This document shows positions 38,848 to 60,007 of a stretch of 64,000 nucleotides of DNA, piece by piece. Source of the DNA: Asterias rubens (Eukaryota); the NCBI RefSeq assembly GCF_902459465.1, contig NC_047062.1:15190001-15254000 (forward strand), in the 5' to 3' direction. The notes below the pieces were generated by a model. The model did no database searches, was not told the origin of the DNA, and saw only the letters and a list, made by a program, of their open reading frames with translations. The position numbers were made by a program, and so were the translations under genes. The first letter of the stretch is position 1. Each line of letters begins with the position of its first letter.

Positions 38848-41800
38848 ATATTAAATTGCTACTTGTATCTTTGTAAAAAATATATTTTTGAGTCGTTTAA
38901 AGTCTGTTGCTCTCCTGCATTTACTTATATAGACACATGTATGTGGAAATAAAATAAATATTTATTAAAAATGCAATCTTGTTTCCTGTCACTGAGTTTA
39001 ATTGAATGCAGTAGCACTCTTTCTTTCTGTATAAAGACCAAATGTTGACTAATCATTCAAGTTCTGTATCATTCACAATTGATCAATGGAACTCTTAGAC
39101 AGTCCTTTTTAACAGTATTGCGCATGCTCAGACCTACGTGCGCAATACTGAGCATGCGCGCTCAGAACTGCAAAAAAGTCCCGTTATATCTGCCGCCATT
39201 ACTAAAAAGTCTCCTAATGAAAAACAAACCCTTTGAGTAAAAGACCTGTACTGAATTAAAAATACAAAGATTTTGTTTTGCCAAATGGGAATTGGCAGGA
39301 AAAATTTTAATGCTGTATACAAAATATTTAATATTTACACATACCTTCAACATTCCTAAGATAATATTTACACAGTGGTTTGTATAAAGTATTGTTATGT
39401 CACATTTCTATAAATAATGTATACACGTTAACAGAACTTTCAAATGAGTATCCAAGCAATAGTTAACTCCAAACACAAGGGCCATAACCATTATCTGATT
39501 TGCTTCACAATTACCAAAGGGTTTCAAACACCAAAGAGCCAAATAATGTTCTATTTTGAGGTTCCAGCCATCAATTTCAACAAACTCCTCCTCACTTGGG
39601 ATTAATCTTAGGCCGAGTCTCAGTTTTTCACTGTAACATGTAAACTTTATGATTAATCCTAAGTTACGACTAGTTATTTTTCCTAACTCGAGATAGGATT
39701 AATCCTAGCATTTCAGCTGCTGATAAGCTAAAAAACTATAGTACAGCTATAGTCCATGTTACCTTTGTTCACAAAAAAGTTACTTTCAAGGACATTTCCC
39801 TGGCAGGCAAGATGCTGCACTGGTCATACAAGAACTTCTACATTTTGTGTTATTAATTTCCATTAATCCAAGGTTCTAAAAGTCACAGCTGAGGACGTTT
39901 TGAGATCTGCCCCCTTTCTTCACATTGAAAGTTGATAGAAAACCAGACTCTACGAAATGTAAGATTCTATTTCTTCATCTTTTGGGCTGATGTGTACAAA
40001 TCTCTCTGTTCAAGCTCTGTTTCGAACCACATGTTAAAATGCCATACATGCTACTCTTTCAGAGCAAACTTTAAAACGAACACAAAGTCAATCAACATAA
40101 TAACATTTCAAAGAGGGTTTTTGTTGCACAAGTCAAAAGGTCAAATTCAATAATGCTTTGACTTAATATCATCAAAATTACAGAATGAACTTAAAATTAT
40201 ATTCATTCTGGTTTTACCCATATACACTAATGTGAGTTAACACGATGCAAATTTACCATCTATCACCTCAAAATTCTCTGTAAAAAAATGTAGGCTATAT
40301 ATTTGAAACGCGATGTCATCAAACACTTTTGCATTTTGAAACAATGTTTTTTGCACTGGCGAGACAAAATATGTATGGTGTACAAGTGCTAACTTTTGAA
40401 GATTTATAATACAAATGAACTAAAGCCTGCTAATACAGCAAAATGCCATAATGCATTACGAGTGGTGTAAAACCCATTGTAACTTCAGACAGCTAATGAA
40501 AAACTTGTCTGCCACATGGACATATTCAGTGACCTATCAAAATGCAAAAACTCGATTTTAAACAAACTAATAAAAATTCCCAATTCTATTCTGACTTTAT
40601 TCCAAATCCAAACCATGGATGGACTCGCTAGCAAATTGTACTTACTACTTACCAAAACTTTATGTTAAATTAGGTCTTTAAAAAAATAAAACTGAACAAT
40701 ATTTTTCTAAAACCTTGATCCTGTGTTTGATGGATCTCAAATCGTTTATAATTTATTGTTAAAATATAATAAAGTAAAATAGACAATAAATGAAATAGGT
40801 TACATCTTGAATTTGAAATACCATCTCTTAATATGAATATGTAGCTCTCCATGGAAATAAAAGAATTTTATAATAGAACTAGAGCGAGTCAAATCGTTTG
40901 TGCATTTTTGTGCTCCATTTTGACTCCCTTAAATGGCCAACAGGATAGGCGCATGTGAGTGCACTGCACGTAGTGCAAAGGGTCTACATGTACATGTACA
41001 GATAATAAAATGAGAATAATATTGGATTCTTAAAGAGCCCACATATCCAAATACATCAAGGCCCTTTACAACATTATTATCCCTGCTCGTCAGGCATACT
41101 TGGACCATTCCTCAAACTTTCTCAACTCCCTCAGGATACACCTTGGTGAAGAGGAGCAATTAAGGTTATTGTCTTGCTCAAGGACACAGATATCACACTT
41201 CCATCATTCAGCCATTAGAATATTTCAGAGGTAAACAAATTTCAGGGCGACTCTCTGTACCAATTTTACATTTACATTTTAAAGTGAACAACAGAAAATT
41301 TACTGAGCTTGACTCCAGATTAACGTGCCAAGCTTTACCATTTAAGCCATCTATCCCTAACGTTGGTGATCACCCTATTTTATCATTATCTTTGTTCGGG
41401 GGTGCCAGTCAGAAGCCCATCAACCTGTTACTGCCATAAAGCCAGGGATCACACCCAAGTCACCTTAAAAGCATACATGTGCGAGTTTTAAAATTTTGAT
41501 TTCGTTGTTGCTGTTTGAAATACTAATGCTGTTTCATCTCTTTTATTGCATGTTCAAATGTAAAAAGGCATGGTTATAGATGTCTTAGTACTGTGTTTAA
41601 GCAGTAAATATTGCTTAAAATTGTTCTGCTAAGCAAAAGTGAGTAAGATACCAGTCAATGGGACATGTGAAATAGTATGTTGGCTGATAACCTTAGCCTA
41701 CTCTAGTAAGCAGCTCTATGAAATCGGGCCCTTGGTTACAGTCGCCAAACCTTAACACTGTTCTGTTTACTCACACAACAGTTTACCTCCAAGATGTCCT

Positions 41801-41862
41801 TGGCTTGGATACAAAATCCAAGACAAATTTAAGAAAAGCAAAATAAATGAAGATGATATGTG

Positions 41863-44800
41863 TCAATGATGTTTGAGTCCCTTTGATGATATTTCCCACT
41901 GTTGTGTTTTTTTGTCTGGTACACACGCTGTCATATAAACTTCTTTGGTGGCTGGTCTATGATCTAAACATTCGTGTAGATCCTCCAAGTATAATGTTTG
42001 TGTGTTCTGCAAAGCAAGGAAAGACAAACAAATGCAAGAACTTTATTTATAATGATGAACACTATACAAGCAATCGATGGTAGTAAGTGATCTTTGTTTT
42101 AAAAACGAACGGCAAAATAAAAAGCAACAATAAGAAAGCCTGAATCAGAGAATTGATAATGGAATATGATTATGATTTTCATCACACTCACCAAATTGTA
42201 AACCCACTGATACCTCGTAGAGTCGCACCGTCGTAACCTGACATCTGATGATGATTTATAGGCACATTGATCATGAATACGAAACTGGCCGTCTTGCGTT
42301 ACTCTAAAGAGTTGATTGCCTCCAGCACCGTGGCAGTACGACATACCGACCTTACCGCCATCTTTCTGACCCATTGAATCCACACAGACATGACCCCCGG
42401 CTACTCTTACCTAAAACACAATTCAAAAAGTTTATTTATTTCCCCAGAATACATAAAAATGAGTAGTAATTATTTTCAGATGGAATTATTCCTGATGAGT
42501 AAGCTTTAACGAATTTGAGGTTTAACTTTAACCTCAAATTTGTTATAAACAAAGACAAATTTACTTGATCGATTTGGACCTGCGACACCGGATCAAAGTG
42601 CCGGCACTCTACTAACTGATCTATCTAGCCCTAATAATGGTGGTCAATTATCTATCTAGCCCTAATAATGGCGGTCAATTTCTTTGACCGGGATGCTAAT
42701 CAGAAACCGTTCAACCTGTTACCCATAAACACTGCAGTTACAAGTTAAATGGCTTCTGACTAGCCACACTGACACATTTACAAAATAGGGTGACTGCCAA
42801 CACTAGGGCCTGATAGCTCTATATTAATTCACGTTAATTCGGAGATCACAGGCTCAATTCTCATACTAGGTTAATTTGTCTTTGTGCGACGGCAACTGAA
42901 TTTAAAAACGCTTCATGGAGTATCAGCACTCACCTCGCCCCATTGTATATTAGCTGCAGGTAGAGGAAACTTCTCCACAATATCTGGCGCAATCTCACTC
43001 ATATACCAAGAGAACGATCGACACTTCTTCTGACGACGGAACTCAAGCTGTTTGTCTATATTTCCTGCAGAGACCAGCAGGGCCTCTGGCTTACTGCGGT
43101 AGAAATACTCTTTGTACTCGTCGAACCAGACTTCCACCACACGCTTCAGATTCTAGAAAGATAACAGAGATGTTTCAATTGGTGACCTAGTTGAGACTGG
43201 ATGCCCAGAAAGAATAGAAATAGTTGTATTGAATTTTATTCCCCCAAAACCGGAACAAACCCCAGTTACAACAAAAACAATATGTAAACTTATAACACAA
43301 CAAAGAAGGAGCGTTTAAGAACAAATATTAAGTTATGCTTGAGTTTCCTAATATAGTAATAACAAGGACATTTGTAAAGCGCCTAATGCGCATAAGCACA
43401 TTAAGAGAACAATAAAGTATACAATGAGTGAAAGATACAATTACAAATAAGCAGATTACAAATAAGCAGCTTCAAACAAATGAGTTCTTAACAGAGACTT
43501 AAAACAGTGTAAAGAACTATAACGAGAATTTGAGGATGGGGCATGAGACCTACATGTAGACAAGAGCAAAAGGTTTGGGTGCTGCTTACTGTAAGCCAAA
43601 ATCAGTGCTTATTACACTATTGGTATTTACTCAAAATAATTGTTAGCATAAACATGAGCAATGGAGAGCTGTTGATAGTATAAATCATTTTGAGACATGG
43701 CTCCCTCTGAAGTAACGTACTAAGCCTGTGCAATACTACACTACCGGTACACTACCTGATTTACACTACAGTAAGTGATATCAGAATGTGTGTTGTGCAT
43801 AAGGTGGCATGTTGTGGCCAAGCGATCAAGCGCACTGGGCTCGATCATCCCTGGGAACGAGGTTGTTGAAACCCTTCTACTTTTGGAGCTCTATGAATTC
43901 ATTAATCACAAAGGAAAATCATTCATAACTAAAGTAGGCCTACATAGTTTGACATCTTAAAAAAAAGACCATTTCCATTCACACAACAATAATTAATCAT
44001 AAATAACTGACTTAAATAGTGAGAAGTGTTGGTGATGTTATCAAATGTAAGATTTGATAAAACAAACGTGTTAAGAGTAAAAGAGTAAACAAGACAAATA
44101 AATGTCAAAATTATTTCAAGCTAGTTGTGTCAAGTTAAATTATCAAACAAAGGAAAAAGTGAGGTTTAAATAAAGACATTTATGCTGCGCAGTTTAACCG
44201 GGAATCAAATACACAGAATTAGCAATATAAACACTCAGCCAATCAACACATGAAGAAGAAAAGAAAACAGCAAACAAATTAATATCCATCAAACTTACAT
44301 GAGTGTTCAGAATTGTTAGCAACTAGTCTAATAATCCAACGTAAACATTTGTGAGAGTTAATCACAAAAAAAACGTCACTTGAATGGGGGATGATAAGCT
44401 ACTCTGACATTTTTGTTTACAACTTCTGAACAAACTAGAATTAATAAAAAAACACTATGTGTATGTGGCTTCATCAGACTGACCAGGTATTATCCGTTCT
44501 GCCCATGCCCAGAAATACTAAGAAGAATTAACCCGGTGAGACTTCCATCTAGTGTCTTCAGTTCGTCAGTTTAACAATGGATCCAACCAACAATCCCGGC
44601 CTTAAATGGTTGGAATTTAGAACACTCGGCAGTAAGAACACACCCCTCTCCCAAATTAGTCAAAAATTCAATCCATGCTGACAACCAAGACCAACATGAT
44701 TGGGATATTTGAAAACATACCCCTCCCTGTCCCCCACACCCCGGGCAATATTGACAATGTGAGAGAAGGGACAGACATACTCCACAATGAGAGAGCCAAC

Positions 44801-47800
44801 CCTGATTGGGATTGGTAGGGAGACAAGGGGTGGGGTGGGGGAGGGGTTGGACAGAGAGAGAGTTGGCCAAGAGTTTGAATAAACATCGAGATTAGGTGTA
44901 ACGATATTCAAATCCAAACCAACAATCAATCGCATAAACAAAAATTACGCCAAGCACAATCTTCAGAATAAGATCGTCATTATTCATAACACAGCAGAGG
45001 AAGAAATCCAGTAAATAAAGATGACAAAACAATTACTGGGAAACTTAAACCAAGTAGGAGAAGGGTTTGAGAAATCCATCCACCAGAGCAGAGAGAGAAA
45101 TCTAGCCACCGAGAGTGAGGATCATTCTTACCCTCTCGCTAAGCATCATCATGCTTCCACCTGGAGATGAATAGGGCACCTTACCATGAATCCGATACAC
45201 ATGACCAACACGGGAACAAGGTATCCACAGAAGGGACCCCCCGCACATCCACAGCTGAGGGTCACGCAATCAACAAAGATAAAACAAAAATAACATCGCC
45301 AGTTAGGATTACACCTTGATTATAACTGTCTTACCATTTCACTTAATACTGCCATGTTCCCGTTTGGAGCCGAGTATGGCACCCTGCCGAGGATTCTATA
45401 GATATGTCCCACACGGGAGCATGGGACCCAGATGAGGGATCCACCACACATCCAGATCTGAAGGATAGGAATTTAACTAAAAATACTGACTCTGAAAAAG
45501 GAATTAGCTTTTGTAAACTGCTCACCAACCAAAAGGACCTATGGCATAAATGCAAAAAACTGTTAGTGGCCAAGTTTCGACCCGAGCAGAGTCTTTCTAA
45601 ATAGAAAGGTACATGTATATAGCAAACTAATCAAATACTGACAGTAAGAATAAAATCAAGATGACTTGAAACTGGTGTGTCTGGTAAAGTGTGTGGTGTG
45701 GATTAAATCATTTCCACAGCAATTTCTCAAATTCAAAATAATAAAGAAACAAGAATTACAACACATTGTGATAACATTCTTTTTATGTAACACACATTTA
45801 TGCACTGCACAACAGATAGGTGGCCAATGAGCAACCATCTTTTGATCTCTAGACAAGAGCGCCCAACTAAAATGATGTCATGTGCATAAGGTCTATTGTG
45901 AGCAATAGCCACATTAGTGTTTGCGCAGCTACTGCGATCCCGGCTCCACTAATTCTCCTCTAGCTGCACATATTATTATTGAACAAAAGAGGGCGCTGTT
46001 GGAAAACTTCCAGATCATCCCACCACAACACACTCAAAACTAGGATATTGTCATCATGAGTTCATAAGCCCGTCTATGAGCGCAAGCCATGGGCAAATAA
46101 CATCTTATCAGGATGGTAGGGTTACAATACCTTAAAAGAGAGTTCAAAGTTTTCCCCGCCCCAGATTTCCAGGCCATCATCGTAGGCTCCAAGCTCAAAG
46201 AAGAACTCTCTGTCCATGGCAAACAGACCGCCGGCCATTGCTGGTGATCTGGGAGTTTAACATTTGGAAATCACAACTTCAGCAAATTATTATCAGCAAT
46301 AATATAAAAACACACATCAACACAAAAAAGGTTTAAAACTTTGCATGATTGATAGCAACATGTTAGCGTTTTAGCTGAATACAGTGTCTACTTGCTTCTC
46401 ACTTTCATATTCTACAGCTAAGCCAAAACAATCCCTGTCATGGTTTATGGTTTATGGTTTATTTATTTAAAAGGTAAAGGTAAGGTAAGGATAGTTTATT
46501 TACAACCATAATCGGACTGGATTTGTTATAAAAAAAAATTAAAAGTTAGAAAAGACATCACATAAAACTAAACATAAAAATGTCATCACAGCATACTTCT
46601 GGATTGCGAAAAAATTCCAGATCGTTACCTGCACAATAGAAAACATATTATGTAAAAATGCACCAAGAATATATCTACAATTAAAAACCAGAAAGGAGAA
46701 AAAACCAGCCTTAAAATGTGATTTCAGTGTTCACAAGATTGGTGAGGTAGGCAAGGGGCTGTTTCAAAATCTGCTCATTAATCTGCTCACAGTTAAACAA
46801 GCCAAACTGGGGTACAAACAACTTCTCCGAAATTGACTGCACAGAAGTGTTTAACACACCTGTATGGCTCTGTCTCATAGCGTCTTCTCTTTCGCTCAAA
46901 CTCTGGGATGGGAAAATGTTTCCAGTACAGACTCCAGTCAAACCCTCCTCGATCTTGGTCTCCCGTTCCTTGCGGATAGACTTTGTAATTCTGGTTGTCG
47001 ATAACGTCGATGACGGGACACACAGCTGTTGTTCTGTGAAAAAAACGAAAAAAGGAAACACTGAATAAGACAAAAGTTTGAAGAATTTGAAACTTAGCAT
47101 GGTGGGAGTATAATCAGGTGAGGTTTGTGGTAGCACCATGTGTGAATCATATCTGAGTAGTGTTTGTTCTGAGAAGAATCGGTGGTTGATTCACAACTCA
47201 ACGTATGCTTCTAAAGACGATCAGGGGCCAATTTCATAGAGCTGCTTAAGTAAAAAATTTGCTTAAGCACGAAAATAGCTCGCTTATTTTACACATGTTA
47301 CTGGCCAAAATTTCATGCCATATACATTGCTTGTGACTGCTATTTAGCTGTTGTTTACTTAGCATAACAATGGAGTGGAGTCTTGGCCGGTAATCTGATT
47401 TAGTACGCAATGATTTTTTCGCTTAAGCAAAATTTTGTGCTTAAGCAGCTCTATGAAATTGGGCCCGGAGCATACTGATACAAATGTTGAGTTGTCAACC
47501 ACCTGTTCTTTTAAGAACTAACACAACCCAAAAGAGATCCACACATGGTGCTGCCGCAAGCCTCAAACAATTCCTGGACATACTCATTCAACAAAGCAAA
47601 ATTTAAAGCATGAAATATGAATGTATGTCAATTTCACACAAAAATTTGCACATTAATATTTTCAAGAAATATCAATTTCTCTCTTCTGTAGGATGCAGGG
47701 GAAAAAGTCACTGTCAAAAAACACATTGTCTTTATTATATTAAATAACATTCCTACGACAAGAGTGTGAGATTGTCAAAAGGTCAAGTGTTTAGACTGGT

Positions 47801-50800
47801 GCTTCATTAAGGTGGTGGGGCAACTGTATGTACATACTGGCCATCTAATATTCTTACATTAACACCATTTCCTACAGGGAAGTGATGTTATATTCTACAC
47901 AGACATTGACACTTGAATAGCAGGCGCTTTGTCCTTAAAAGGGAAAGTATCATTTGGTTTCTGGAACCGTTTGATTTTCATTTCAAGACATTTGATTATT
48001 TTAATCCTATATAAATAACCGTTTGATTTTTCATTTCAAGACATTTGATGATTATTTCAATCCTATATAAATATAGAACATGTGAAACTAACATGTGAAA
48101 ATTTAATGGCTTTAGATAAGTTCCTAGCTTTTTAAGTTCCTTGTATCTGTTTATTTGTCTTTTTGTTCATGTAGATCTCATGTCAAGGTCTATTTGTCCA
48201 TTCAATGTCTGAATGGTTTTTTTCCCTGTTTTTTTTTTCCATGTTCAATATTTCCTTAAATGAATATTGATGAAATTTGACAAGAGAATATAATTTGTAT
48301 TTCCTCGAACATTTATTGACTGTAGTCAGTTTCCAAAGGGTAAAGAGAATGAACCCCTGCCTCTTTAAAATCAATATCCCCATCTCCCGTCTCTGTCGAG
48401 AATGTAAGGCCAAATAAAAAAGAATTAACATGTTTTGCGTCCTGCCTTTTTGAAAAAAGGAAGGAGGGACATTTTTTTCTTCTCAAAATGGCCACCTGAC
48501 ACATTAAAAACAAAAAACTAAAAAGTATGAGATCCTTTAAATGTATCTTTTTTTTTATGAAAAAGACACATGTTCAAAATAAGACAAAAAAGGGGGGGGG
48601 AAATTGTTTTTCATTAAAAAGGGTGAAAAAAGAAGAAAAGAAAAAAGAAAAGAAAAAGGAGACCAGCTTCTAAAAAGGTAGCAGACAGGGCGGTAAACAT
48701 GTTTTTTTTCTATATTTGGCCTAAAGGATTCTAGTCGGTGATTCCTCCACGTGCTCAACCCACCCTCTTCATCAATCTCAGCCGTTGCTATATAAACACA
48801 ATCAGCTTTCCCCTTCCAGCATCTGCAGCCGTTGTTAAATGGTGCAGAAATTTACTTCTGGCATGGCTGCCCCTTAAAAACAAGGACAGGGCTATGCTGA
48901 TAAGAGAGCAGTCCAGAGGTGGACAAGTCTTTTCCCTAATGCGCAAACTGTTAATATTTGTCCTGTCATACAGGTGTGACTTTTGTTGATGACACAGTTA
49001 AAACTCTTCCCTCATGTTTTTTCTTGGATTTCAGACAAACGTGTCAAAATTTCACTAACATTGCATGCATACATGGTCCAAGTTATATGTTTACCCACCT
49101 GTACTGACTAACATGCATATTTGTGCAGTTTTTATCGCATCAGTTTTGAGAGAGTCTATTTACCACTTTTATAATGTGACTGCATAAGAAAAGTGCACTG
49201 ACACAAATTGCATGGCAGAAAACTAACAAACTTAATTTGAGGCATAATTGTTTATAACAATTATGCAGTGCATACAGGAGCTGTAAATGTTTTAGTAAAT
49301 AAATAATACATGTAGATAAAATGGTTTGATAATGGAGGCTCATGCAACAGATAACACGAAAGCATTTATACATGAACATGAATGATTCTTTGAGACTGAA
49401 TACCTCCAGAAAGAAAAGAAAGCAAAAATTCAGGAGGCTATATATGCACAGTATGTAACGCACAGCTTACAGTGTACATGTACATTGTGTGATTATTACT
49501 CAAATAATCCTAGTATTTCCTGGAAGTTACCACAAAAATCAAGTAAAATAAATACTTTTAATGGGAAAGTATTTGTTTGTTTTTACACGTTGGATTGTTT
49601 TAATCCTATATAAATTAAAACTAACATGTGTAGACTTAATTTCAAAAGGTGGTAATTGGAATACACAATCTGAGAAACGTTTCCGACAGTAGCGCTTCTC
49701 AGACTCAATTTCTTATCACATTACATCAAAGTAAGATGACTCTCAAATTGTTCTGTACTATTCGAAAGCTGTTGTACTTGTCACCAAGTAAATTCGTCTT
49801 GTGTTGCCTTTAGTTTTGACAGAGTGATTACCAAACATATACCTTCCCTTTAACTCTCTACTTGGAAATGTCTTTTTACCTATTGAGTGCTATCGGGGTG
49901 AGCAGAGGAGCCAACCAGTTAATTCCAACCTCGCAGTGTGCATCCAACCATAGCAGAACATCCCCCGTTGCGGCTTTGGCTCCATTGATGCGTGTCCGGA
50001 TCAACCCTTCACGCTTCTCATTCCGCACAATTTTCAGTTTACCACTGAACCGCGCAGACAGGGCGTAATCGTCTAGCTTCTTCTTCACATGCTCTGTCTC
50101 ATCCGAAAAAGAAAAAAAACACTCGCTCAAAATCGCTCAATTTTGTTTAAGGTCCCTAACTCCCATGTGTGTTGTATTAAACCAATCAAACTGAAGCAAA
50201 ACAAGGGAAGAGTATACCAAGAAAAGACATCACCTTTAATTGATCAAGAATCTTGTGCATAAATCTGGCCATAGTACATGTTGTAATGAAAGAACAGTCC
50301 CTGGTTTAAAAAATCTATTTATTTCAGACGGATATACAATTTTGTAAAAGTGTAGTCAGTATAATGCTAAAGTGTTCAACAGTTTCTTTGAATACAGGCT
50401 ATTTTTGTATGATTCTAGAAATTCCACCCCTTCAGATTTTTGAAGGAAACTGACCTTTAGTGCTTGCATCATCTACTAGTATGATTTCATGAAGGAGTTG
50501 TGGTGGAGATCGATTGAACACACTATGTACAGTTCTGAGTAGCGTAGACCAGCCCTCGTTGTGGAATACTATGATGACGCTGGTGGTTGGTAACTTCTCA
50601 GGATAATGCCAATACTTGCATCTGGGTTACCACAAGACAGTAAAGAAAACAGAACTTTATAATAACACCACAAAATCATTTATGTCATCATGATGGATAT
50701 CATGTCATAATAATGAGTTTGTGAATCAGGTTGGTTCATGTTTCCCCAATAAAGCAATCTAGACTATTTCAAGAAGAATATCAATTCCTACCCTCAGCTC

Positions 50801-53800
50801 CCCAGAGTTATCTTTATCTGAAATATTTTGTTCTTGTAGCCCCTCAACAAGAGTGGCTTACGGGCTTGTTTGGGGCAACCTTATTCAATGTGGAATTTGC
50901 CCATTGCACCTTTAACGTAGCACAGCTTTCCTCAGTAGTGTAAAAGTAATCTTGTAACTGCCAATTACATTTAGCTTAATATATAGATTGAGACACACTG
51001 CCTGTATAATGTTACCGCTCTTATCAAAACACTATTACACCCCTGCCTCAAGTCCACTGCATCCTTACACCTACATGTAGCAGTATCTTATTTCTTAAAG
51101 AAACTAAATTCATGCATAAACACTGCTAAGGGGTGTCAAGGAGTTTAGGCTACAATAAAATGTCTGATGTGAGAGAGAGGAAGGAGTATTAAATGCACTG
51201 GACACGTTTGGTAATTGTCAAAGACCAGTATTCTCACTTGGTGTATCCCAAAAAATATGCATAAAATAACAAACCAGTGAAAATTTGGTCTCATTTGATC
51301 ATCGAATTTGCAAGAGAATAATGAAAGAAAAACACCCTTGTTGCATTACTTTGTGTGCTTTCAGATGCATAAAAAAGGTTTCAGCTTAAGTCTTTCATTA
51401 TTTGAGTGAGAAAATGCCTCTCTCTGAAAAACCATGTTACTTCATAGGGAGCAATTTCTCACAATGTTTTATACTATCAACAGCTCCCCATTACTCGTTA
51501 CCAAGTAAGGTTTGTGCTAACAATTATGTTGAGTAATTACCAATTGTGTCCAGTGCCTTCAAAGATGAAGTTGTTTGCGTTTAGATGGTTGATTTCGAGA
51601 CCTCAAGTTCTAAACTTGAGGTCTCGAAATCAAATTCGTGAAAAATTACTTCTTTCTCCAAAACTATGGCACTTCAGAGGGAGCTGTTTCTCACAATGTT
51701 TTATACCACCAACCTCTCCAATTACTTGTCACCAAGAAAGGTTTTATGCTAATAATTATTTTGAGTAATTACCAATAGTGTCCACTGCCTTTTAAGTTTT
51801 AAAACATATAACATGTTTCTAAATACCCATAGGATCTGTACTCATGCACAATGATGAAGGGCATGAGGGAATTAATTGTGCAAGTTTTCTATTTGGTAGT
51901 AGCATGTTTTTCTTTCGCGCTTCCCTGGCGTTTTTTTAAGGACTTTGTCACCACAGGCAGAATTTACGTGTTGGGACTTCAAACAATCTTTTAATCAAAT
52001 GTCATGCATGACAATGCATGATGAACAGTGTCTGTTATTATCCAACCCTCGGCATTGATGGACGCAAACAGTGTATTTTATTTCCCACTAGATCTTTATT
52101 ACTTATGTCCTGGATTAGAAACATCTCCAAAACACAATCCTGTTTAAAGGCACTGGACACTATTGGTAATTGCTCAAAATAATTGTTAGCATTTTAAATA
52201 CCTACTTGGCAACGAGCAATGAAGAGCTCGTGATAGTATAAAACATTGTGAGAAACGACTCCCCTAGAAGGAACATAATTTTGTTTACATTAGATCTCAG
52301 GCCTTGAACCTTTTATTAGGCATCTGAAAACACACAAATTATTGTGCAACAAGGGTGTTTTTTCTATCATTATTTTCTTGCAACTTCAATGACCAATTGA
52401 GTAAAAATGTCCACAGATTTGCTATTGCATGCATGCTGAAAATAATGGTTTTTGACAATTACAAAACCCGCCAGTGCCTTTATTATTATTATTTTTTTTC
52501 TACTTTAGTGCAAATCTTGTTTTAAGAATAAAAATACTTACTGGGCATTTCTTAGATCTGGTATGTTCCGGTCCAATGATATCTTATCACTGACATATTG
52601 ATTAAAACCGTACTCCCTTATACCTCTCTCCACCGCCTCTTTCTCGCCTGCACCGGTTCTGACCGGAACCCCATTCTCGCCCGGTCCATCACGGGGAGGG
52701 GGTATGTCAGGCTCATAATTCCCAGGTATATTCTTCAAGGAAGCCCCTTGATGAGCTGGTAACTGAAAGCTGTGAGTGTCTTTGTGCATTGGTGGGCGAT
52801 CAATACCAGCTGCTTGGGAATCATGGGCCAGATCGGCAATTTTCTGTGATAAAAAAAAAATCTCATTTAAACCGTAGGATAGAGTAAGGACAGAGAAACT
52901 ATCATGTTTAAAGTTTTAACCAATCTCACATACATACATGTTCATGTACATGTATGCCATTACAAAGAACACCAGACACAAACCTGAGTAATCACCACAT
53001 CTATACTTTCCTCTCTTATCACGTTCTTCAGGGAAACTTATTCCAGTGGAGAAACCGAAAGAGATGTTTACCCCAAACACAGGTGGTGTGCCTGTGAAAA
53101 CAGACTTTCAACCAAACTATTGATACGTGTTACGTGATTTGCATTCGCAAATGTACAGGTAAGTAAGACTTTGTGGACGAATACTGAAATGTTGGATTTA
53201 AGGACACGAATCCTTAATAAAAAGCCAAATGTATTAGTGTGCATCATGCGCACACATACAGGATGGACCACCAGGCTCAAGCCGCACAGCTGTGGTGACA
53301 GCTGCAATTTATTCAATTTTTTCCCCCAGCAATTATCTCACCGTGAGCTATTGATTTGTTCATCCAGACTGGATACGGAAAACTGGCAGATACTGTACGA
53401 CATAGTTAAAAACCTGTTCGGATTCTGCTAAGCATTTTCATGCTCGACAAACAAACGTTCTTTAAATGGTAGAAGCTGGTTTTGGCCAGACACAAAAAAT
53501 CAAATAACAAAATTACAGCAGTTACAATTTTTAGAAGGCGCTTTTCCATCAGTATCATTGTCCACATAATAGAAATTAACATGGCTAGAAGTGGGTCTTA
53601 CATGTAGGCCTCACATACAAGAGCAATTTAGCAAGGATCCCCTGCTTAATTGACCCTTTCCATGAAATATGCTAATTACATTCACGCATGCGTACAGACC
53701 CTGTTGGTTGGCAAACACTATAGAGTTGTGCACTAAGCAGACGCGCAATCGTGTGTGCGTCACGCACCCATTAGCCGTGTACAAAATAGCGCGATTTTCC

Positions 53801-56800
53801 CTCATTTTGCCCACCAAAACGTTAGTGCGCATGCGCTATGTGCAATTTACATTTCATGTGAAGGGTCTATTGTAGCATGGTTGTTAAGTTTTACAAAATG
53901 TACCTGGTATGAGAATACAACAATTTTTGTACTGTCCAGGGTCAAACATTGGTATATTTTCTCAGCAGTCCAAACCAATGACAAAATCTTATGCAAGCGG
54001 AAGTTTTTACCAAGGATGTGTATCATCGTGTGAAAAGGGACCTTTCATACATTTTGAAAAAAAAATAAAAAAATTGGTACTTGGTAGGCTCAAGAAAGTT
54101 TCCTGGATCGAGTGATGGGGTAATTCTCTCAGCTCAAAGGTTGGAAAATGCCAAACCATTTGCACCTTATTTTGTAATATTTTAATTCTGTCCAATTCTT
54201 TAAAACGTAGCACAATATAGGATTAATGCCATATATTCAAAATGGGAGAAGACTCAACATGATAGAAAGTATGCTTTTGATTATTCCCATGTTTTGTAAT
54301 TGAAAATTAGGTGATTGGCAGAGGCTAGAAACTTGCTTATACTTCCGACTGTTATTTTTTTTTATATGAGTAATATGATTCCCAAATGGCCAATGTGTGC
54401 AACACCCATAGGAAAAGATACCTGAGGCAGTTTCTTTAAAGGTTTTGGGGAGTACAAGCACAATGATCTCAATTTAGTTTTTCGTTTAGCTAATGACTTG
54501 TTGCAAGTCATCCACTGTTGAACATCAGTATTGTCATGGTAACACACAGCAGCAGCTTTTTTTATGGCAACTTGCCATACACCAGGTATTCTAGAGTCAA
54601 AGGAACAATACAGCTGTGTATCATGTACCTGTACTGCAGTGACTTTAAAGGCAGTGGACACTATTGGTAATTGTTAAAGACCAGTCTTCTCACTTGGTGT
54701 ATCTCAACATTGCATAAAATAACAAACCTGTGAAAACTTGAACTCAATCGGTCATCGAAGTTGCGAGATATTAATGAAAGAAAAAACAGCCTTGTCACAC
54801 TATGGTCACATGAAGTTGTGTGCTTTCAGATGCTTGATTTCGAGACCTCAAATTCTAAATCTGAGGTATTGAAATCAAATTCGTGGAAAATTACTTCTTT
54901 CTCGAAAACTACGTCACTTCAAAGGGAGCTGTTTCTCACAATGTTTTATACTATCAACCTCTCCCCATTACTTGTAATCAAGAAAGGTTTTATGATAATA
55001 ATTATTTTGAGTAATTACCAATAGTGTCCACTGCCTTTAAGACACTGACAAATGAGAGGGTGTAACTTCAACAATTCAAGGGACCTAAAATGGACCCTTG
55101 CGGTGGTCCGTACTCAACTGGATAAGAGTAGTTATTATAATAGAAACCTGACTTTGTCTATCAGAAAGAGATGACTTGAACCAAAGAAGAACAGTAGTGA
55201 AGCAGTTTCTACATTATTGTTTAAAAAGTTAACATCAATTCAACCAATACACACATTTTGATTATGCATGCAATGCACTATGTTAACAAGACCACAGACC
55301 TTGATATAAAAGGGTTATATGGACAAATTGTAATACCAATTACACACCCAATGAGCTGAAAACCATCAGTTGGAACAAGCAGTCTAATTCAAAAGCATAA
55401 AGGAACACAATTCAACAATTTGAAAGCTATTATTTCTGTTGTCCAAAACTGTTCGGTGCCAATGACCACAAACTTCAGAAATGTTTCTGGCACACAAAAC
55501 ACTGGCCAAACAACTTGCAACCTGGTCTGGAGTTTTGAGACAGTTCACGATTTTTCCAGTAAGATTATTTTTTAAATATTGTTTCAAGGGCCATGACTGA
55601 TATTTTGCTGGCTTTAAAAGCTTAGATATCTATAATTGGATGGTCACAAAAATAGTGTCACAACATTGAAATGAAAATAATTAAATCACCTAGATAGCCT
55701 AAGGGGACGGGGAGACTAAGAAAAAAGGATGAGGGCAGGAACACTCAGAGTTTCTGTTGTTGTATCTTGACTTCTCTAACTTAAAGGTGAATGATCTACA
55801 TGTATGCCACGTAATGAACGTATGCTAAACTGTTTAAATTAAAATTAATTCCTTTTCTGTCTGTTGAATGCTGATGCAACTGATTTTGTGAGACTGAGAG
55901 AACACGTACATAATCTGGAATAATGAACGAACGAACGTGTCTGCAGTAATCCATGCTTGTCATAATTAATAGTGTAGTAACCTACTCTAGACTGATGGTC
56001 AAGATCCTAGGGTGGATTTCACAAAGAGTTAGGACTAGTCTTATCTCAAGTACTTGTCCTAACTTAGGACTAGCCATGCGTTTTTTATTCCTACATGTAG
56101 TAAGGACTAGTGTGTGAAATCGACCCCTGATGTATTAAATTGACTGCAAGTTTCACAGAGGCTATCATTTACATGAATACATCATCTTGCATGGTGTAAC
56201 CATGGAGGAAGGTGTAACTATCGCCTCAAGGGGCTTCTCTACTTACAGGACAACCCTGTCCAGAATGAGAGATCTGAACAGGAAGGAGTCCTTAAAGGCA
56301 GGGGACACTATTGGTAATTACTCAAAATAAATATTAGCATAAAACCTTACTTTGTAACGAGTAATGACGAGAGGTTGATAGTATAAAACATTGTGAGAAA
56401 TGGCTCCCTCTGAAGTGGAGTACTTTTCGAGAACGAAGTAATTTTCCATGAATTTGATTTTGAGACTTCAGTTTTAGAATTTGAGGTCTCGAAATCAAGC
56501 ATCTGAAAGCACGCAACTTTGCGCGACAACAATTGGGTGTTTTTTCTTTCATTATTATCTTGCAAATTCGCTGACCGATTGAGCTCAAATTTTCACAGGT
56601 TTGTTATTTTATGCATTATGTTGAGATACAGCAAGTGAGAAGACAGGTCTTTGACAAGTACCAATAGTGTCCAGCGTCTTTAAAGGGTTTGTGTACATTT
56701 TGTACGACACAAAACACAATGTCCACGGATTTACGTTACTTAAACAGTTTAAAGATGATGGTAGAATGCTTCCCTTAAAATATTACTTGCTGAGGTGCTG

Positions 56801-59800
56801 TAGTCATTGAGAAAAAACAATTTCACAAAAATAATTTTTGTCTCATAAGGCAAAATTTATTTAAGCATGTACAACGGATTTACATTGCTCTGTGATTTTC
56901 AATTTTTTCCTAAAAAAAACTTGACGTCTTGAGAAGCTGAAACTTCTACAGGTAAATTATACTATATCTCTTCATTCACAGTGTGAGTAAGGATTCGTGT
57001 TATGGTCACAAACTTGATCTACAAAGGGTATCAAAACCCTTTAAAGGACAATCCTGTCCAGAAAGAGAGATCTGAGGAGGAAAGACTCCTTTCAGCTTAC
57101 TCTTGATATTCCTTAGCATAGATTCAAAGAGACACGTGTCTGCATGGTGGTGCCTCTGGCTTTACTGTCAAAATGAACTGCTTTCTAGATGCTGTTCTGT
57201 TCAGGAAAACGTTGACGCTAATCATTGTTGAACCTTTAGAAGCATTTTCTGTTAACCCCCTTACTGTCTGACCATTCAACATCATTCATCAACACGATTT
57301 TAAAAGACAGATGATGCACTAAGCAAGCCTGCAATAGGATGTGGTTAATTCATCAAACAGCACACGGTTCCACTCTACAAAACATTCATTTCAGTTGAAC
57401 GGAACATGGAAAAATACTTTGCCTTCAGCTCACCCACCCTTTGGAACTCTATTTGGAACTGCTACCCTCCATTCTCAGAAGGACACGTATCTCTTCAAAA
57501 TACACCTAAAATCTGACCTGTTTGCTCAATCTTTTTGGTATCTTTAATAGTTAAGTTTTTTGAAGATAAGCTCCTACACTTGTATTGGTAACATTGTTTG
57601 CAGCGCTTTGAGAGTTCTCCCATAACTGAAATTTATGCACTGAATATAATTATTATTATATTAACATAAATAGTAATTATTATTCATAATACCCATGATT
57701 GCAAATTGAATTAGTGTAATCCATAAAATTTTATGATATCAAAAATGATGTTTTTCATCAAACCAAAACAAGAGCATTGATTTTTTTTTTAGTATGCTCC
57801 CACAAACGAGGAATGGTGAGTGACAAATTACAACTGGGGAAAATCTCGGCCAAAAACTGTGTGAATTTTTATCGAAAAATTATCTTTTATCCTGATGCTA
57901 TATTTGTGGGCGTAGGACCAAGAAGTGGAGAGAGGCCAGTGTATCGGCACTAGGTCTTTACGGGAATACCCCGATCAGAGATGGGGGTTGTTGTCTCAGA
58001 AACCACTTTAAACATTACAAGTACAACTCACAACTCGGTTTAGTTCAACTTCACACACCCATGTGTGAAGGTGTGTGCAAGTTAAAGCAACGAATCACAG
58101 GTGACGTCATGCAGAAATTTTTGCAGACGACACCAAGGTATACACCCCTATATTAAAACTCAGGATGACAGAGAAACACTCCAACACGACCTACATGTAG
58201 ACAGCTTCTACGACTGGGCAGAGAAATGGCAGTTAAAGTTCAATGTTGGTAACTGCGGTATAATGCATTATGGGAACCAAGACGGAACCAGTCCATACAG
58301 TATGCCAGATGGAACAACGTCTAACGAGGACAAATGTGGAAGTAAGGGCTGACGAGAAGGATCTTGGTGTCATATTTGACCCATCACTGAAGTGCAGCAA
58401 ACATGTTTGGGTGGTTGCCAACAAAGCAAACAGAATAGTGGGTCTAAAGGAGGACATTTGCGCATGGATGAAGATATGTTTTGTTTGCTATATATGTACA
58501 CAAAACCGTTAGTTAGACCCCACCTGGAATATGCAAATTGTGTGTGGAATCCATTTCTCAGTCAAGACATCACTAAGCTGGAGAAAGTGCAGAGAAGGGC
58601 AACAAAAATGGTCTCAAGTATAAAGGATCTCCCATACAGGAACCGGCTGGAGAGATTTGCTTGACCTGCCCACTTTGGCCTACAGACGCCTTCGAGGTGA
58701 CATGATCCAGGTGTTCAAGATAACGAAAGGACTCAGTGACGTGGACAAAGATAGCCTTTTTTTGATGAAGGAAGGAACCATAAACCTGAGAGGCCATAGC
58801 AAGAAAATTCAGACGCAACATGTCCACAATTGAACATCAGAAAGAACAGCTTTACACACAGAGTAGTTGACCACTGGAACATGGTCCCTATTAAAAGAAG
58901 GCAGTAGAAGCAGCATCAATATATATCTGCTTTCCAAGTTCAGATTAATCTTTGTACAACATGATAACCCATGCAGTGGATTTTGAATGAAATAAGGTGG
59001 GCATTATAGGACTTAGTCTTAAATTAGAGCCCGTGAAGACAGGTAACTACAGGTAACTAGACAAATCTGCGCCTTCTTTGAAAAGATGGCTCATATTAAG
59101 CCCAGGTTAGACTCTGACACTCAATGCGACGGAGTCCAGAATATAAAGGTACTGACTACTGCAATATATTTTATAGTTATACCTAAAAAGTAATAATAGA
59201 GGAATTAAGCTGAAGCTTCGTTCACATTCCTTGTGTCCAGAATTCCTTGCCTATGTACTGGGTTCAGAACTGTACAATTTTATCAAACTTTGTAAACGCA
59301 TCAGCAGTCAATTTCACAAAACTTTTCACAACAGCGTAAGTCCACTTGCGCAATGTTTTTTCGCCATAAGCGTCCAAAGTGGACTTACACAGTTGTGTAA
59401 AGTTTTGTGAATTTGACTTGCAACTTAATTAAGTTATATAGTTTAATCTTGTATTTGAGTGACAAAAAAACAACATTGCAAAATAACACAAACAAAAAGA
59501 CAGGATTGCTGCTTGCAGTTTTTAATTGAATACTAAAATTATTGACACTCATTCAATTCAACTTCAAATCAAGCCTAGCCCCACTTGTGTGGCCAAGGAT
59601 AAGGATTTAGCTATCCTTAGCCACACAAGACAAGTGGGGCTAAGTCAAGCCCAGTTTTGCAATCAACTGTGTGCAATGACATTATGGCAGTTCAGCAGTC
59701 TGGACTGTACTCTGCTGTGGCTTTACATTGAATAATTTGTAACTTGTGAGTACAAAAAAGCACATCCAGGCACTTGCTGAGGTCACATGCAGTGCAGTGG

Positions 59801-60007
59801 AGTTAAGACAATTTGAGTAGAAATTCTTAGTCGTCTTAGAGTTAGAATAGTACTTACCAGTTTGTTTGCCTGATTGGGTTGGTTGTTCTTGCTTCCATTG
59901 GCATTCCCTGACATCTCACCCGCCATTAAAAACGTCCTCAACATAAAAACTACCACCACAGTAACGGTAACGAAAAGGACACATCTTTTGGTTCGAAATC
60001 TAGCCAT
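41863..60007 (-). CDS. GALNT7: Polypeptide N-acetylgalactosaminyltransferase, GALNT7/pgant7-like, ~609 aa (GT27 catalytic domain + ricin-type lectin)
   Basis: Exons 60007-59858, 52843-52542, 50621-50455, 50093-49880, 47033-46860, 46248-46131, [45457-45335 or 45254-45132], 43152-42934, 42410-42192, 42006-41863; total 1830 nt, all GT-AG and in phase. Signal anchor [21 protein letters not shown] and [13 protein letters not shown] match the GALNT7 subfamily as I recall it. Also DxH (LDAHCE), [26 protein letters not shown], and lectin CHGAGGNQ and QQW. Confidence 0.93.
45132..45254 (-). CDS. GALNT7: Alternative (tandem-duplicated) exon 7b of the GALNT7-like gene: [41 protein letters not shown]
   Basis: 123 nt, phase 0-0, acceptor GACCCTCAG, donor AGG|GTAAGA. 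Same length as exon 7a (45457-45335) and 29/41 aa identical to it. It is absent from the supplied ORF track. Confidence 0.9.
51189..51562 (-). mobile_element. K1 MITE (diverged, near full length), followed by a second partial copy to 51795
   Basis: TTAAATGCACTGGACACGTTTGGTAATTGTCAAAGACC ... AATTACCAATTGTGTCCAGTGCCTT. Confidence 0.8.
52144..52482 (+). mobile_element. K1 MITE
   Basis: TTAAAGGCACTGGACACTATTGGTAATT ... GACAATTAC...CCAGTGCCTTTA. Confidence 0.8.
54645..55040 (-). mobile_element. Full-length K1 MITE with both TTAA sites and ~27-bp TIRs
   Basis: TTAAAGGCAGTGGACACTATTGGTAATT ... AATTACCAATAGTGTCCACTGCCTTTAA. Confidence 0.9.
56292..57044 (+). mobile_element. Head-to-tail K1 (56292-56682) + K4 (56679-57044) MITEs sharing a TTAA
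   Basis: Junction GTGTCCAGCGTCT-TTAA-AGGGTTTGTG; the outer ends are also TTAA. Confidence 0.85.
58120..58900 (+). mobile_element. Degenerate 5'-truncated CR1-type LINE (RT C-terminal region), frameshifted
   Basis: Fragments [59 protein letters not shown] and [15 protein letters not shown] lie across different frames. Antisense within GALNT7 intron 1. Confidence 0.88.
59302..59420. mobile_element. ~120-bp hairpin MITE with a TIR related to the H families; another relative at 63362-63508
   Basis: GTCAATTTCACAAAAC..GTAAGTCCACTT ... AAGTGGACTTAC..GTTTTGTGAATTTGAC; 63362-63508 reads GGGCCGATTCCACAAAG ... CTTTGTGAAATTAACCC. Confidence 0.65.

What the first reader, a model, noticed from the sequence alone, without database searches (positions are those of the whole stretch)
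45132..45457. Mutually exclusive tandem exons swap the catalytic flexible loop of a GALNT7-like O-glycosylation enzyme
Seen: two 123-nt phase-0 exons, 7a ([41 protein letters not shown]) and 7b ([41 protein letters not shown]), both with intact splice sites. They are 29/41 aa identical with about 18 synonymous codon differences, which indicates an old duplication with both copies under selection. The 80-nt intron between them has a branch-point motif CCTAAC only ~32 nt from the 7a donor, followed by an AG-free U-rich tract. Established: a branch point closer than ~50 nt to the upstream donor sterically prevents joining, as in the alpha-tropomyosin MXEs. This segment carries the Mn2+-binding His of PCSRVGH and the flexible loop (about residues 361-377 in GalNAc-T2) that closes over UDP-GalNAc and shapes acceptor binding. 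Eight of the 12 substitutions fall after the His (e.g. L/H, R/K, N/G, A-V/M-M, M/R). Inference: one gene encodes two enzymes with different peptide or glycopeptide preference or kinetics, switched by splicing. I know of splice variation in GalNAc-T lectin domains (e.g. Drosophila pgant9) but cannot say whether this catalytic-loop switch has been described in this lineage.
Basis: partly seen in the sequence, partly recalled or inferred. Interest (0 to 1): 0.85.

Follow-up and report, generated by a model that had tools for sequence, protein, structure and literature searches.

The report
Sea-star glycosylation enzyme swaps catalytic lid
A sea-star gene for a protein-glycosylating enzyme (GALNT7-like) carries two alternative copies of the exon that builds the lid over its active site. 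All three starfish genera examined keep both copies, so one gene probably makes two slightly different enzymes, a design already shown to work in a fruit-fly relative.

Summary
Two 123-nt phase-0 exons lie at 45457-45335 and 45254-45132 on the minus strand, 80 nt apart, each with AG/GT splice sites. They share 29 of 41 residues and differ at 18 synonymous codons.

The window encodes Asterias rubens XP_033624442.1, a GALNT7-subfamily GalNAc-transferase.
- NCBI models of A. amurensis contain either 7a (X1) or 7b (X2), never both.
- Acanthaster and Patiria have the same a/b pair in the same order, with a 72-76 nt intron.
- Both copies evolve under strong purifying selection: orthologous a exons show 12 synonymous and 0 non-synonymous differences, and b exons show 12 and 1.
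- The b exons of the three genera form one clade. A sea urchin has a single copy.
- The exon aligns to GalNAc-T2 residues 342-379, which include the Mn-binding His359 and the flexible loop.

I obtained no direct junction reads. Steric exclusion and a functional difference between the isoforms remain inferences.

It is not a new kind of feature. Drosophila pgant5 A/B swap the same loop with shown functional consequences, and C. elegans gly-5 and gly-6 have exclusive exon clusters. New here are the GALNT7-lineage case in starfish and an independent five-copy cluster of the same exon in amphioxus.

The parts
41866..60007 (-). Coding span of the GALNT7-like gene. The 10 coding exon positions are E1 60007-59858, E2 52843-52542, E3 50621-50455, E4 50093-49880, E5 47033-46860, E6 46248-46131, E7a or E7b, E8 43152-42934, E9 42410-42192 and E10 42006-41866.
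   Evidence: Across every junction tested with GT..AG introns, the spliced translation equals P0269, which is A. rubens XP_033624442.1. Pfam finds Glycos_transf_2, Glyco_transf_7C and Ricin_B_lectin. The best solved relative is human GalNAc-T7, 6IWQ.
46131..46248 (-). Exon 6, constitutive, ending ...ELSFK. Its donor at 46131 joins to either 7a or 7b.
45335..45457 (-). Exon 7a, 123 nt, phase 0-0. It is the a-type lid with signature residues I1, I9, L23 and R25.
   Evidence: It is present in A. amurensis isoform X1, P0271. Its orthologues are Acanthaster L006:16536-16658 and Patiria L008:19319-19441.
45255..45334 (-). The 80-nt intron between 7a and 7b. Its first half is A-rich and holds CCTAAC at 45307-45302. 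After that comes a U-rich, AG-free tract running to the 7b acceptor.
   Evidence: The intron is 72 nt in Acanthaster and 76 nt in Patiria. The next-shortest intron of this gene is 185 nt.
45132..45254 (-). Exon 7b, 123 nt, phase 0-0. It is the b-type lid with signature residues L1, L9, H23 and K25.
   Evidence: It is present in A. rubens X2 (P0269) and A. amurensis X2 (P0270). Its orthologues are Acanthaster L006:16731-16853 and Patiria L008:19518-19640. The b exons form a clade with 98% bootstrap support.
42934..43152 (-). Exon 8, constitutive, starting NLKRVVEVW. It continues helix I, which begins in exon 7.

Best explanation
The window holds the Asterias rubens gene for a type II Golgi polypeptide GalNAc-transferase of the GALNT7 subfamily. 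Its seventh coding exon exists as two tandem homologous copies, 7a and 7b, and mature mRNAs include one or the other.

The exon encodes these elements:
- the last strands of the GT-A core;
- the PCSRVGH motif, whose His binds Mn2+;
- the flexible gating loop that closes over UDP-GalNAc and contacts the acceptor peptide;
- the first turns of helix I.

The gene therefore makes two isoenzymes that differ only in the active-site lid.

The duplication arose after the starfish line split from sea urchins and before Forcipulatida and Valvatida split. Both copies have been kept under purifying selection since then. Across starfish, the fixed a/b differences are I/L1, I/L9, L/H23 and R/K25. Positions 23 and 25 lie 5 and 7 residues after the His. 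That is next to or within the three-residue patch whose identity sets substrate charge preference in Drosophila PGANT5A and PGANT5B.

Inferred, not shown:
1. The two isoenzymes differ in acceptor preference or kinetics. The derived loop His of the b lid is the most likely determinant.
2. Use of a versus b is regulated by tissue or stage.
3. Joining 7a to 7b is prevented mainly because the intron between them is very short (72-80 nt), with the branch point upstream of a long pyrimidine tract and so within about 45 nt of the 7a donor.
For: Anatomy:
- Both exons are the same length and phase with intact AG/GT sites.
- The exact exon map reproduces P0269.
- Homologues have one copy of the segment between ELSFK and N[LY]xRV.

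Usage:
- A. amurensis X1 and X2 are both 609 aa and differ only at the 12 positions of 7a versus 7b.
- Acanthaster X1/X2 and Patiria X1/X2 differ only within the same exon.
- No model in the searches contains both exons.

Age and selection:
- The order (a then b) and the short intron are shared by three genera.
- Diadema has a single copy and no second copy in the 766-nt downstream intron.
- Orthologous a exons show 12 synonymous and 0 non-synonymous differences. Orthologous b exons show 12 and 1.
- Asterias versus valvatid dN/dS is 0.04-0.13. Between a and b, dS is saturated in Asterias and Patiria and about 1.0 in Acanthaster.
- The b exons form a clade at 98%.

Structure:
- The alignment places exon residue H18 at T2 H359 and exon residues 21-34 at T2 362-373.
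- The AF2 model (mean pLDDT 86) has strands at 382-394, a coil at 395-409 with the lowest confidence of the catalytic domain, and a helix from 410.

Family:
- The best PDB hit is GalNAc-T7.
- The gene sits in an ambulacrarian clade sister to chordate GALNT7, with support 98/92.

Precedent: the PGANT5A/B loop isoforms have different specificities and different rescue ability in vivo (PMC12776162).
Against: - No splice-junction read was recovered. The raw RNA runs gave depth of about 4 on exon 6, about 1.8 on the 7a bin and about 0.7 on the 7b bin in one run, and essentially none in two others.
- No Asterias transcript-derived protein fragments were found, and no junction matches in metagenome contigs.
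- The evidence for exclusive use is therefore annotation models plus evolutionary constraint.
- Most a/b differences are conservative. The two valvatid genera (Acanthaster, Patiria) differ at only 6 residues, so the isoenzymes could be nearly equivalent.
- CCTAAC is not conserved in Acanthaster or Patiria.
- A TTGAT candidate branch site lies 16 nt from the 7b acceptor in Asterias.
- The minimum spliceable intron in starfish is unknown to me.
- Both exons are 3n, so NMD cannot remove double inclusion or double skipping. A double-skip model (A. amurensis X3, 568 aa) is annotated.
Confidence: 0.8

Rival explanations
1. The exons are mutually exclusive, but the two proteins are enzymatically equivalent. 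On this view the pair is kept because the copies have split expression between tissues or stages through their different splicing signals, not because the lids differ in chemistry.
For: The differences are mostly conservative (I/L, V/I, R/K). Only 6 of 41 residues differ in Acanthaster and Patiria. All invariant catalytic residues are identical in a and b.
Against: The a/b-specific residues L/H23 and R/K25 have stayed fixed in each exon lineage across three genera while synonymous sites turned over. His23 is a derived, non-conservative change at a loop position where the orthologous clade has Leu in 8 of 9 sequences. In PGANT5 a single residue in the adjacent patch changes kcat/KM several-fold.
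Confidence: 0.25
2. Only one of the two exons is really used. The other is a decaying duplicate that gene predictors pick up.
For: My own read data cannot show use of either exon at junction level.
Against: Both copies keep open frames, splice sites and near-zero dN/dS between genera whose synonymous divergence is 0.7-1.5. Alternative models with each exon exist in Asterias amurensis, Acanthaster and Patiria. An unused exon would not be conserved this way.
Confidence: 0.05
3. Both exons are normally spliced in together, giving a 650-aa enzyme with a duplicated lid.
For: Both exons are 3n, so the frame would be kept. An 80-nt intron is not impossible to splice in many invertebrates.
Against: No homologue or annotated isoform has the segment twice in a credible model. 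Duplicating core strands and the Mn-binding His inside a GT-A fold should wreck the domain; this is an inference from the model. The a-b intron has been held at 72-80 nt while neighbouring introns vary from about 0.7 to 3.9 kb.
Confidence: 0.03

Closest known systems
Drosophila melanogaster pgant5 isoforms A and B (UniProt Q6WV17-1/-2; PMC12776162)
   Same: Alternative homologous exons replace the catalytic flexible loop and the start of the following helices of a GalNAc-transferase, leaving the rest identical. The alternative region starts at 398 and the loop residues are 419-421. From memory, the Mn-binding His of GalNAc-T1 is His344. On that basis the fly His is 415, so the fly region starts 17 residues before the His, the same offset as in the starfish exon (His is residue 18). 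The functional consequences are shown: different peptide specificity, tissue-biased expression and isoform-specific rescue.
   Different: It belongs to a different subfamily (GalNAc-T1/T13 orthologue, not T7) and a different phylum. The fly cassette is 60 aa and also covers helix II. The decisive residue is Asp/Lys 419, whereas starfish differ at Leu/His and Arg/Lys. The duplication is independent.
C. elegans gly-5 (exons 9a/9b/9c) and gly-6 (exons 8a/8b) mutually exclusive clusters (PMC4165533; Hagen and Nehrke 1998)
   Same: These are GalNAc-transferase genes with tandem homologous 3n exons of about 105 nt. The introns between them are very short (34 and 11 nt) and are judged physically unspliceable. 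NMD cannot police inclusion because the lengths are 3n.
   Different: I could not map which protein segment these exons encode. The nematode introns are far below any splicing minimum, whereas 72-80 nt is borderline. PMC9741552 pairs gly-5 with human GALNT13 and Drosophila Pgant5, so it belongs to the T1/T13 subfamily.
Amphioxus (Branchiostoma) GALNT7-like gene, found here
   Same: The same exon of the same subfamily is tandemly multiplied. There are five intact 120-123 nt copies with AG/GT sites between the ELSFK-type exon and the NYMRV exon (L010). Annotated isoforms use copy 2, 3 or 5 alone.
   Different: It has five copies, and most introns between them are long (97 nt to 2.3 kb), so steric exclusion cannot be the general rule there. 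The copies resemble the vertebrate GALNT7 loop (GWxGNPPP), not the echinoderm one, so the duplication is independent.
Alpha-tropomyosin exons 2/3 (steric-hindrance model of mutual exclusion)
   Same: The proposed rule is that the branch point of the downstream exon lies too close to the upstream exon's donor for the two to be joined.
   Different: In tropomyosin the branch point was mapped experimentally. Here it is only predicted, and the tolerated donor-to-branch distance in echinoderms is unknown.
Human GalNAc-T7 (PDB 6IWQ/6IWR) and vertebrate GALNT7
   Same: It is the closest solved and named enzyme, at 596 bits with a gapless alignment through the exon-7 segment. The domain order is the same.
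   Different: In the vertebrate GALNT7 proteins retrieved here (fish, a caecilian, a bird, a hamster) the loop segment appears once. Fish models instead show a same-length alternative for the preceding exon. The starfish gene is one of several ambulacrarian GALNT7-type genes; it and a sister paralogue together are sister to chordate GALNT7.

Membership tests
GT27 polypeptide GalNAc-transferase, GALNT7 subfamily | GT-A catalytic domain followed by a C-terminal ricin-type lectin domain | tested here: met
   PF00535 at 165-351, PF02709 at 334-396 and PF00652 at 487-599, in both isoforms.
GT27 polypeptide GalNAc-transferase, GALNT7 subfamily | Mn-binding DxH motif and the distal His of PCSRVGH | tested here: met
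   D257 and H259 are nearly invariant and H393 is invariant in the 45-sequence alignment. H393 aligns to T2 H359. The role of these residues comes from established GalNAc-T structures.
GT27 polypeptide GalNAc-transferase, GALNT7 subfamily | Closer to GalNAc-T7 than to other isoenzymes | tested here: met
   The T7 hit scores 596 bits against 479 for T10 and 445 or less for the others. The ML tree places the gene in an ambulacrarian clade sister to chordate GALNT7, with support 98/92.
GT27 polypeptide GalNAc-transferase, GALNT7 subfamily | Glycopeptide-preferring follow-up activity | not testable with these tools
   This needs enzyme assays.
Mutually exclusive tandem-duplicated exons | Adjacent homologous exons of equal length and phase with intact splice sites | tested here: met
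Mutually exclusive tandem-duplicated exons | Mature transcripts carry exactly one of the exons | tested here: inconclusive
   Annotated isoform pairs in Asterias amurensis, Acanthaster and Patiria carry one exon each. My own RNA reads were too few to show junctions. A double-skip model also exists (P0284).
Mutually exclusive tandem-duplicated exons | Both copies maintained by purifying selection | tested here: met
   dN/dS is 0 to 0.13 between orthologous copies, with dS of 0.7-1.5. The b exons form a clade at 98%.
Steric-hindrance type of exclusion (tropomyosin 2/3, C. elegans short-intron clusters) | The donor-to-branch-point distance of the intervening intron is below the spliceable minimum | tested here: inconclusive
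   The intron is 80, 72 and 76 nt in the three genera. Each has a pyrimidine-rich second half and an AG-free zone of 32-51 nt before the acceptor, which puts likely branch sites within about 45 nt of the donor. No lariat data are available, CCTAAC is not conserved, and the starfish minimum intron size is unknown.
Catalytic flexible-loop splice switch (PGANT5 type) | The alternative segment contains the gating loop after the Mn-binding His | tested here: met
   Exon residues 21-34 align to T2 362-373. In the AF2 model they form a coil with the lowest pLDDT in the domain, followed by helix I.
Catalytic flexible-loop splice switch (PGANT5 type) | The isoforms differ in substrate specificity and in tissue use | not testable with these tools
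   This needs enzyme assays and tissue-resolved RNA data.

The most novel reading that the evidence does not exclude
The lid exon of GalNAc-transferases is a discrete phase 0-0 exon. Its boundaries are shared by echinoderms, amphioxus and at least one nematode. It appears to be a recurrent hot spot for tandem duplication into mutually exclusive clusters, with two copies in starfish GALNT7-like, five in amphioxus GALNT7-like and two in fly pgant5, all independent. The worm gly-5 and gly-6 clusters may be further cases. Lid swapping by splicing would then be a general, convergently evolved way for animals to multiply O-glycosylation specificities without gene duplication. In starfish, the derived loop His of the b lid would make the switch charge- or pH-sensitive.
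Probability: 0.45. Interest if true: 0.6.

Novelty: new member of a known kind. Interest (0 to 1): 0.5.

Why it matters
GalNAc-transferases decide which Ser/Thr residues receive mucin-type O-glycans, and what sets each isoenzyme's specificity is still poorly understood. Nature has performed a clean lid-swap here. The two enzymes are identical except for 6-12 residues around the gating loop, and the pair has probably been kept for a couple of hundred million years or more (a dating from memory, not tested here). Together with the fly PGANT5 pair and the five-lid amphioxus gene, this gives a comparative series for working out which loop positions tune acceptor choice. It is also a compact case for testing how 3n exon pairs are kept exclusive without NMD.

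Tried and rejected
- **Junction evidence from reads.** Reads were laid on three raw RNA runs and one metatranscriptome. The gene is barely expressed in them and no junction reached the listing threshold. The metatranscriptome contig (45161-45445) is unspliced. In hindsight the small contig runs X1-X4, which hold about one exon's worth of words, might have been more telling.
- **Transcript-derived protein fragments.** A search with P0271:346-446 found no Asterias fragments.
- **Spliced-junction patterns.** Patterns for exon 6 joined to 7a/7b and for 7a/7b joined to exon 8 found nothing in metagenome contigs.
- **RNA structure.** I looked for competing RNA structure. The only pairing touching the exons is a 12-nt, 92% match between 7a and 7b. 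That is at chance expectation and is not kept in Acanthaster, so I rejected it. There are no Rfam matches in 41800-47100.
- **U12/U2 incompatibility.** I rejected this because all donors are ordinary GT donors.
- **Worm exons.** I tried to map the C. elegans gly-5 and gly-6 exons. The 1998 paper is not held. Two nematode relatives, Bursaphelenchus L009 and Angiostrongylus L011, have a single lid exon. The question stays open.
- **Brittle star.** The Amphiura genomic DNA could not be fetched because the gene range is too long. The duplication is therefore dated only as after the sea-urchin split and before the starfish crown.
Full report
**Observation**

Each is preceded by a pyrimidine tract ending in cag and followed by gtaaga. 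They share 29 of 41 residues. 42 of 123 nt differ, as 18 synonymous and 12 non-synonymous codon differences. The intron between them is 80 nt. CCTAAC lies at 45307-45302, with the branch A 32 nt from the donor, and is followed by a U-rich stretch with no AG before the acceptor. No third copy exists in the window. Nine of the 12 substitutions, not eight, lie after the His.

**The gene**

I used hemichordate and starfish homologues as guides and required GT..AG introns and an exact translation. This gave ten coding exon positions between 60007 and 41866, and their spliced product equals P0269, Asterias rubens XP_033624442.1 isoform X2.
- The protein has Glycos_transf_2, Glyco_transf_7C and Ricin_B_lectin domains.
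- Its best solved relative is human GalNAc-T7, at 596 bits against 479 for T10.
- In an ML tree of 49 proteins it sits in an ambulacrarian clade sister to chordate GALNT7, with support 98/92. Ambulacrarians have additional paralogous lineages.

**One copy or two in the protein**

Every homologue has this segment once, between ...ELSFK and N[LY]xRV....
- The A. amurensis models X1 (P0271) and X2 (P0270) are both 609 aa and differ only at the 12 positions that separate 7a from 7b.
- A. rubens X2 carries 7b.
- A. amurensis X3 (568 aa) skips both exons.
- Acanthaster planci X1/X2 and Patiria miniata X1/X2 are also equal-length pairs that differ only inside this exon.

As I understand NCBI's pipeline, alternative models are made only with transcript support. 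I could not inspect that support.

My own attempts at direct evidence failed.
- The single read-laying run gave depths of about 4 (exon 6), 1.8 (7a bin), 0.7 (7b bin) and about 2 (exon 8) in one run, next to nothing in two others, and no listed junctions.
- The one metatranscriptome contig there is unspliced.
- No Asterias transcript fragments turned up in the protein collection.
- No junction matches turned up in metagenome contigs.

**Age and selection**

Genomic loci show the same arrangement in Acanthaster (a at L006:16536-16658, b at 16731-16853, intron 72 nt) and Patiria (a at L008:19319-19441, b at 19518-19640, intron 76 nt). The sea urchin Diadema has one copy and nothing similar in the flanking introns. 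Two further relatives known only from Logan contigs also show one copy within about 1.6 kb. The brittle-star locus could not be fetched.

| Comparison | Result |
|---|---|
| Acanthaster a vs Patiria a | 12 synonymous, 0 non-synonymous differences |
| Acanthaster b vs Patiria b | 12 synonymous, 1 non-synonymous difference |
| Asterias vs valvatid orthologous exons | dN/dS 0.04-0.13, dS 0.8-1.5 where it could be estimated |
| a vs b within a species | dS saturated in Asterias and Patiria, about 1.0 in Acanthaster |

The b exons of the three genera form a clade with 98% bootstrap support. The duplication therefore predates the Forcipulatida-Valvatida split. From memory that split is roughly 200 My old or more, and I did not test the date here. 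Both copies have been coding sequence ever since, and there is no sign of gene conversion.

The a/b-specific residues fixed across starfish are I/L1, I/L9, L/H23 and R/K25. Compared with the orthologous clade, L1 and H23 of the b exon and I9 of the a exon are derived. Asterias 7a also has an unusual Met at position 41, where all orthologues have Arg.

**What the exon encodes**

The alignment to GalNAc-T2 places the exon at T2 residues 342-379. Exon residue H18 corresponds to H359 and residues 21-34 to 362-373. From memory, those are the Mn-binding His and the flexible loop defined in the T2 structures. An AF2 model of the 7a isoform (mean pLDDT 86.4) has these features:
- strands at 382-394;
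- a coil at 395-409, where the 10-residue block 401-410 has the lowest confidence in the catalytic domain (66);
- helix I from 410, running into exon 8.

Of the 12 Asterias differences, five lie in the loop (23, 25, 30, 32, 34), three at the start of helix I (36, 37, 41) and four in the core (1, 9, 11, 19).

**How exclusion may work**

All donors are ordinary U2-type, and both exons are 3n, so neither spliceosome incompatibility nor NMD applies. The a-b intron is held at 72-80 nt in three genera. The neighbouring introns range from 0.7 to 3.9 kb, and the next-shortest intron in the Asterias gene is 185 nt. In all three genera the second half is a pyrimidine tract and the last 32-51 nt are free of AG. 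This places the likely branch site within about 45 nt of the 7a donor.

This fits the steric model, but three points weaken it. The CCTAAC motif itself is Asterias-specific. A TTGAT candidate lies 16 nt from the 7b acceptor. I do not know the smallest intron starfish can splice. I put the steric explanation at about one half. I found no convincing conserved RNA pairing.

**Comparison with what is known**

The idea is not new. Kumar et al. (PMC12776162) show that Drosophila pgant5 makes isoforms A and B that differ in residues 398-457.
- That region covers the catalytic flexible loop and a helix-turn-helix.
- Isoform A predominates in salivary glands, and only A rescues the knockdown.
- One loop residue (D/K419) shifts kcat/KM on charged mucin peptides.

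The paper equates residue 420 with A349 of GalNAc-T1. From memory, the Mn-binding His of GalNAc-T1 is H344. The fly His is then 415 and the alternative region starts 17 residues before it. That is the same boundary as the starfish exon. The starfish L/H23 falls at His+5, inside the fly's 419-421 patch.

Kuroyanagi et al. (PMC4165533) verified exclusive clusters in C. elegans gly-5 (three exons) and gly-6 (two exons). These have 34-nt and 11-nt introns judged unspliceable. I could not map which segment they encode.

Martinez-Gomez et al. (PMC9741552) list GALNT13, Pgant5 and gly-5 among families with convergent tandem-exon events. They class the human and fly events as affecting different regions.

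I found no paper describing the starfish case or any GALNT7-lineage lid switch. The isoforms do already sit in NCBI's automatic annotation.

**Side finding: amphioxus**

The Branchiostoma belcheri GALNT7-like gene has five tandem copies of the same exon, all with AG/GT sites (L010). Annotated isoforms from several Branchiostoma assemblies use copy 2, 3 or 5 alone. The copies carry the chordate-type loop, so this duplication is independent of the starfish one. A nematode T7-like gene keeps the same exon boundaries as a single 117-nt phase-0 exon. This suggests that an old, symmetric exon is easy to duplicate.

**Verdict**

The locus is a starfish-wide pair of mutually exclusive lid exons in a GALNT7-subfamily enzyme. 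It is a new member of a kind already characterised in flies. Junction-level usage, the exclusion mechanism and the biochemical difference remain to be shown.

Noticed in passing
L010:5499-9333 (Branchiostoma belcheri, KV411585.1): There are five tandem copies of the lid exon in the amphioxus GALNT7-like gene (5499-5621, 5719-5841, 8127-8249, 8648-8770, 9211-9333), all with AG/GT sites. Annotated isoforms use copy 2, 3 or 5 alone. An 870-aa model (P0283) strings four copies together, probably a prediction artefact.
   Followed up: partly
Proteins P0335/P0358 (Cottoperca), P0337/P0342 and P0327/P0340 (Oryzias): Fish GALNT7 isoform pairs of equal length differ at 19 residues within a 49-residue block, just upstream of ...[11 protein letters not shown]. 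That block corresponds to the exon before the one equivalent to exon 6 here (window E5, 47033-46860). This looks like a second, separate exclusive exon pair in vertebrate GALNT7.
   Followed up: no
window:43614-43719: A dispersed repeat in intron 7 collects thousands of RNA reads at 90-95% identity, with varied flanks, in all three raw RNA runs (depth 2500-3200). It has no Rfam match. It is probably an abundant transcribed repeat family.
   Followed up: partly
Protein P0284 (A. amurensis XP_071802891.1): This annotated isoform skips both 7a and 7b (568 aa). It lacks the Mn-binding His and the loop, so it should be catalytically dead while retaining the lectin domain. It could be splicing noise or a regulatory product.
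   Followed up: no
Proteins P0001 and P0003 (unknown source): These short predicted proteins consist of several tandem, partly frame-shifted repeats of the ...[18 protein letters not shown] piece of this exon. It looks as if a fragment of a GalNAc-transferase exon has become a tandem repeat in some genome.
   Followed up: no
L011:5592-5708 (Angiostrongylus costaricensis): A nematode T7-like gene has the lid segment as a single 117-nt phase 0-0 exon with the same boundaries as in deuterostomes. In Bursaphelenchus (L009) the downstream intron is missing.
   Followed up: partly
Proteins P0011, P0152, P0153, P0155 (Anopheles): These GalNAc-transferase models of about 1000 aa contain two complete catalytic regions with diverged lid segments. 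They are either fused tandem genes or real two-headed enzymes.
   Followed up: no
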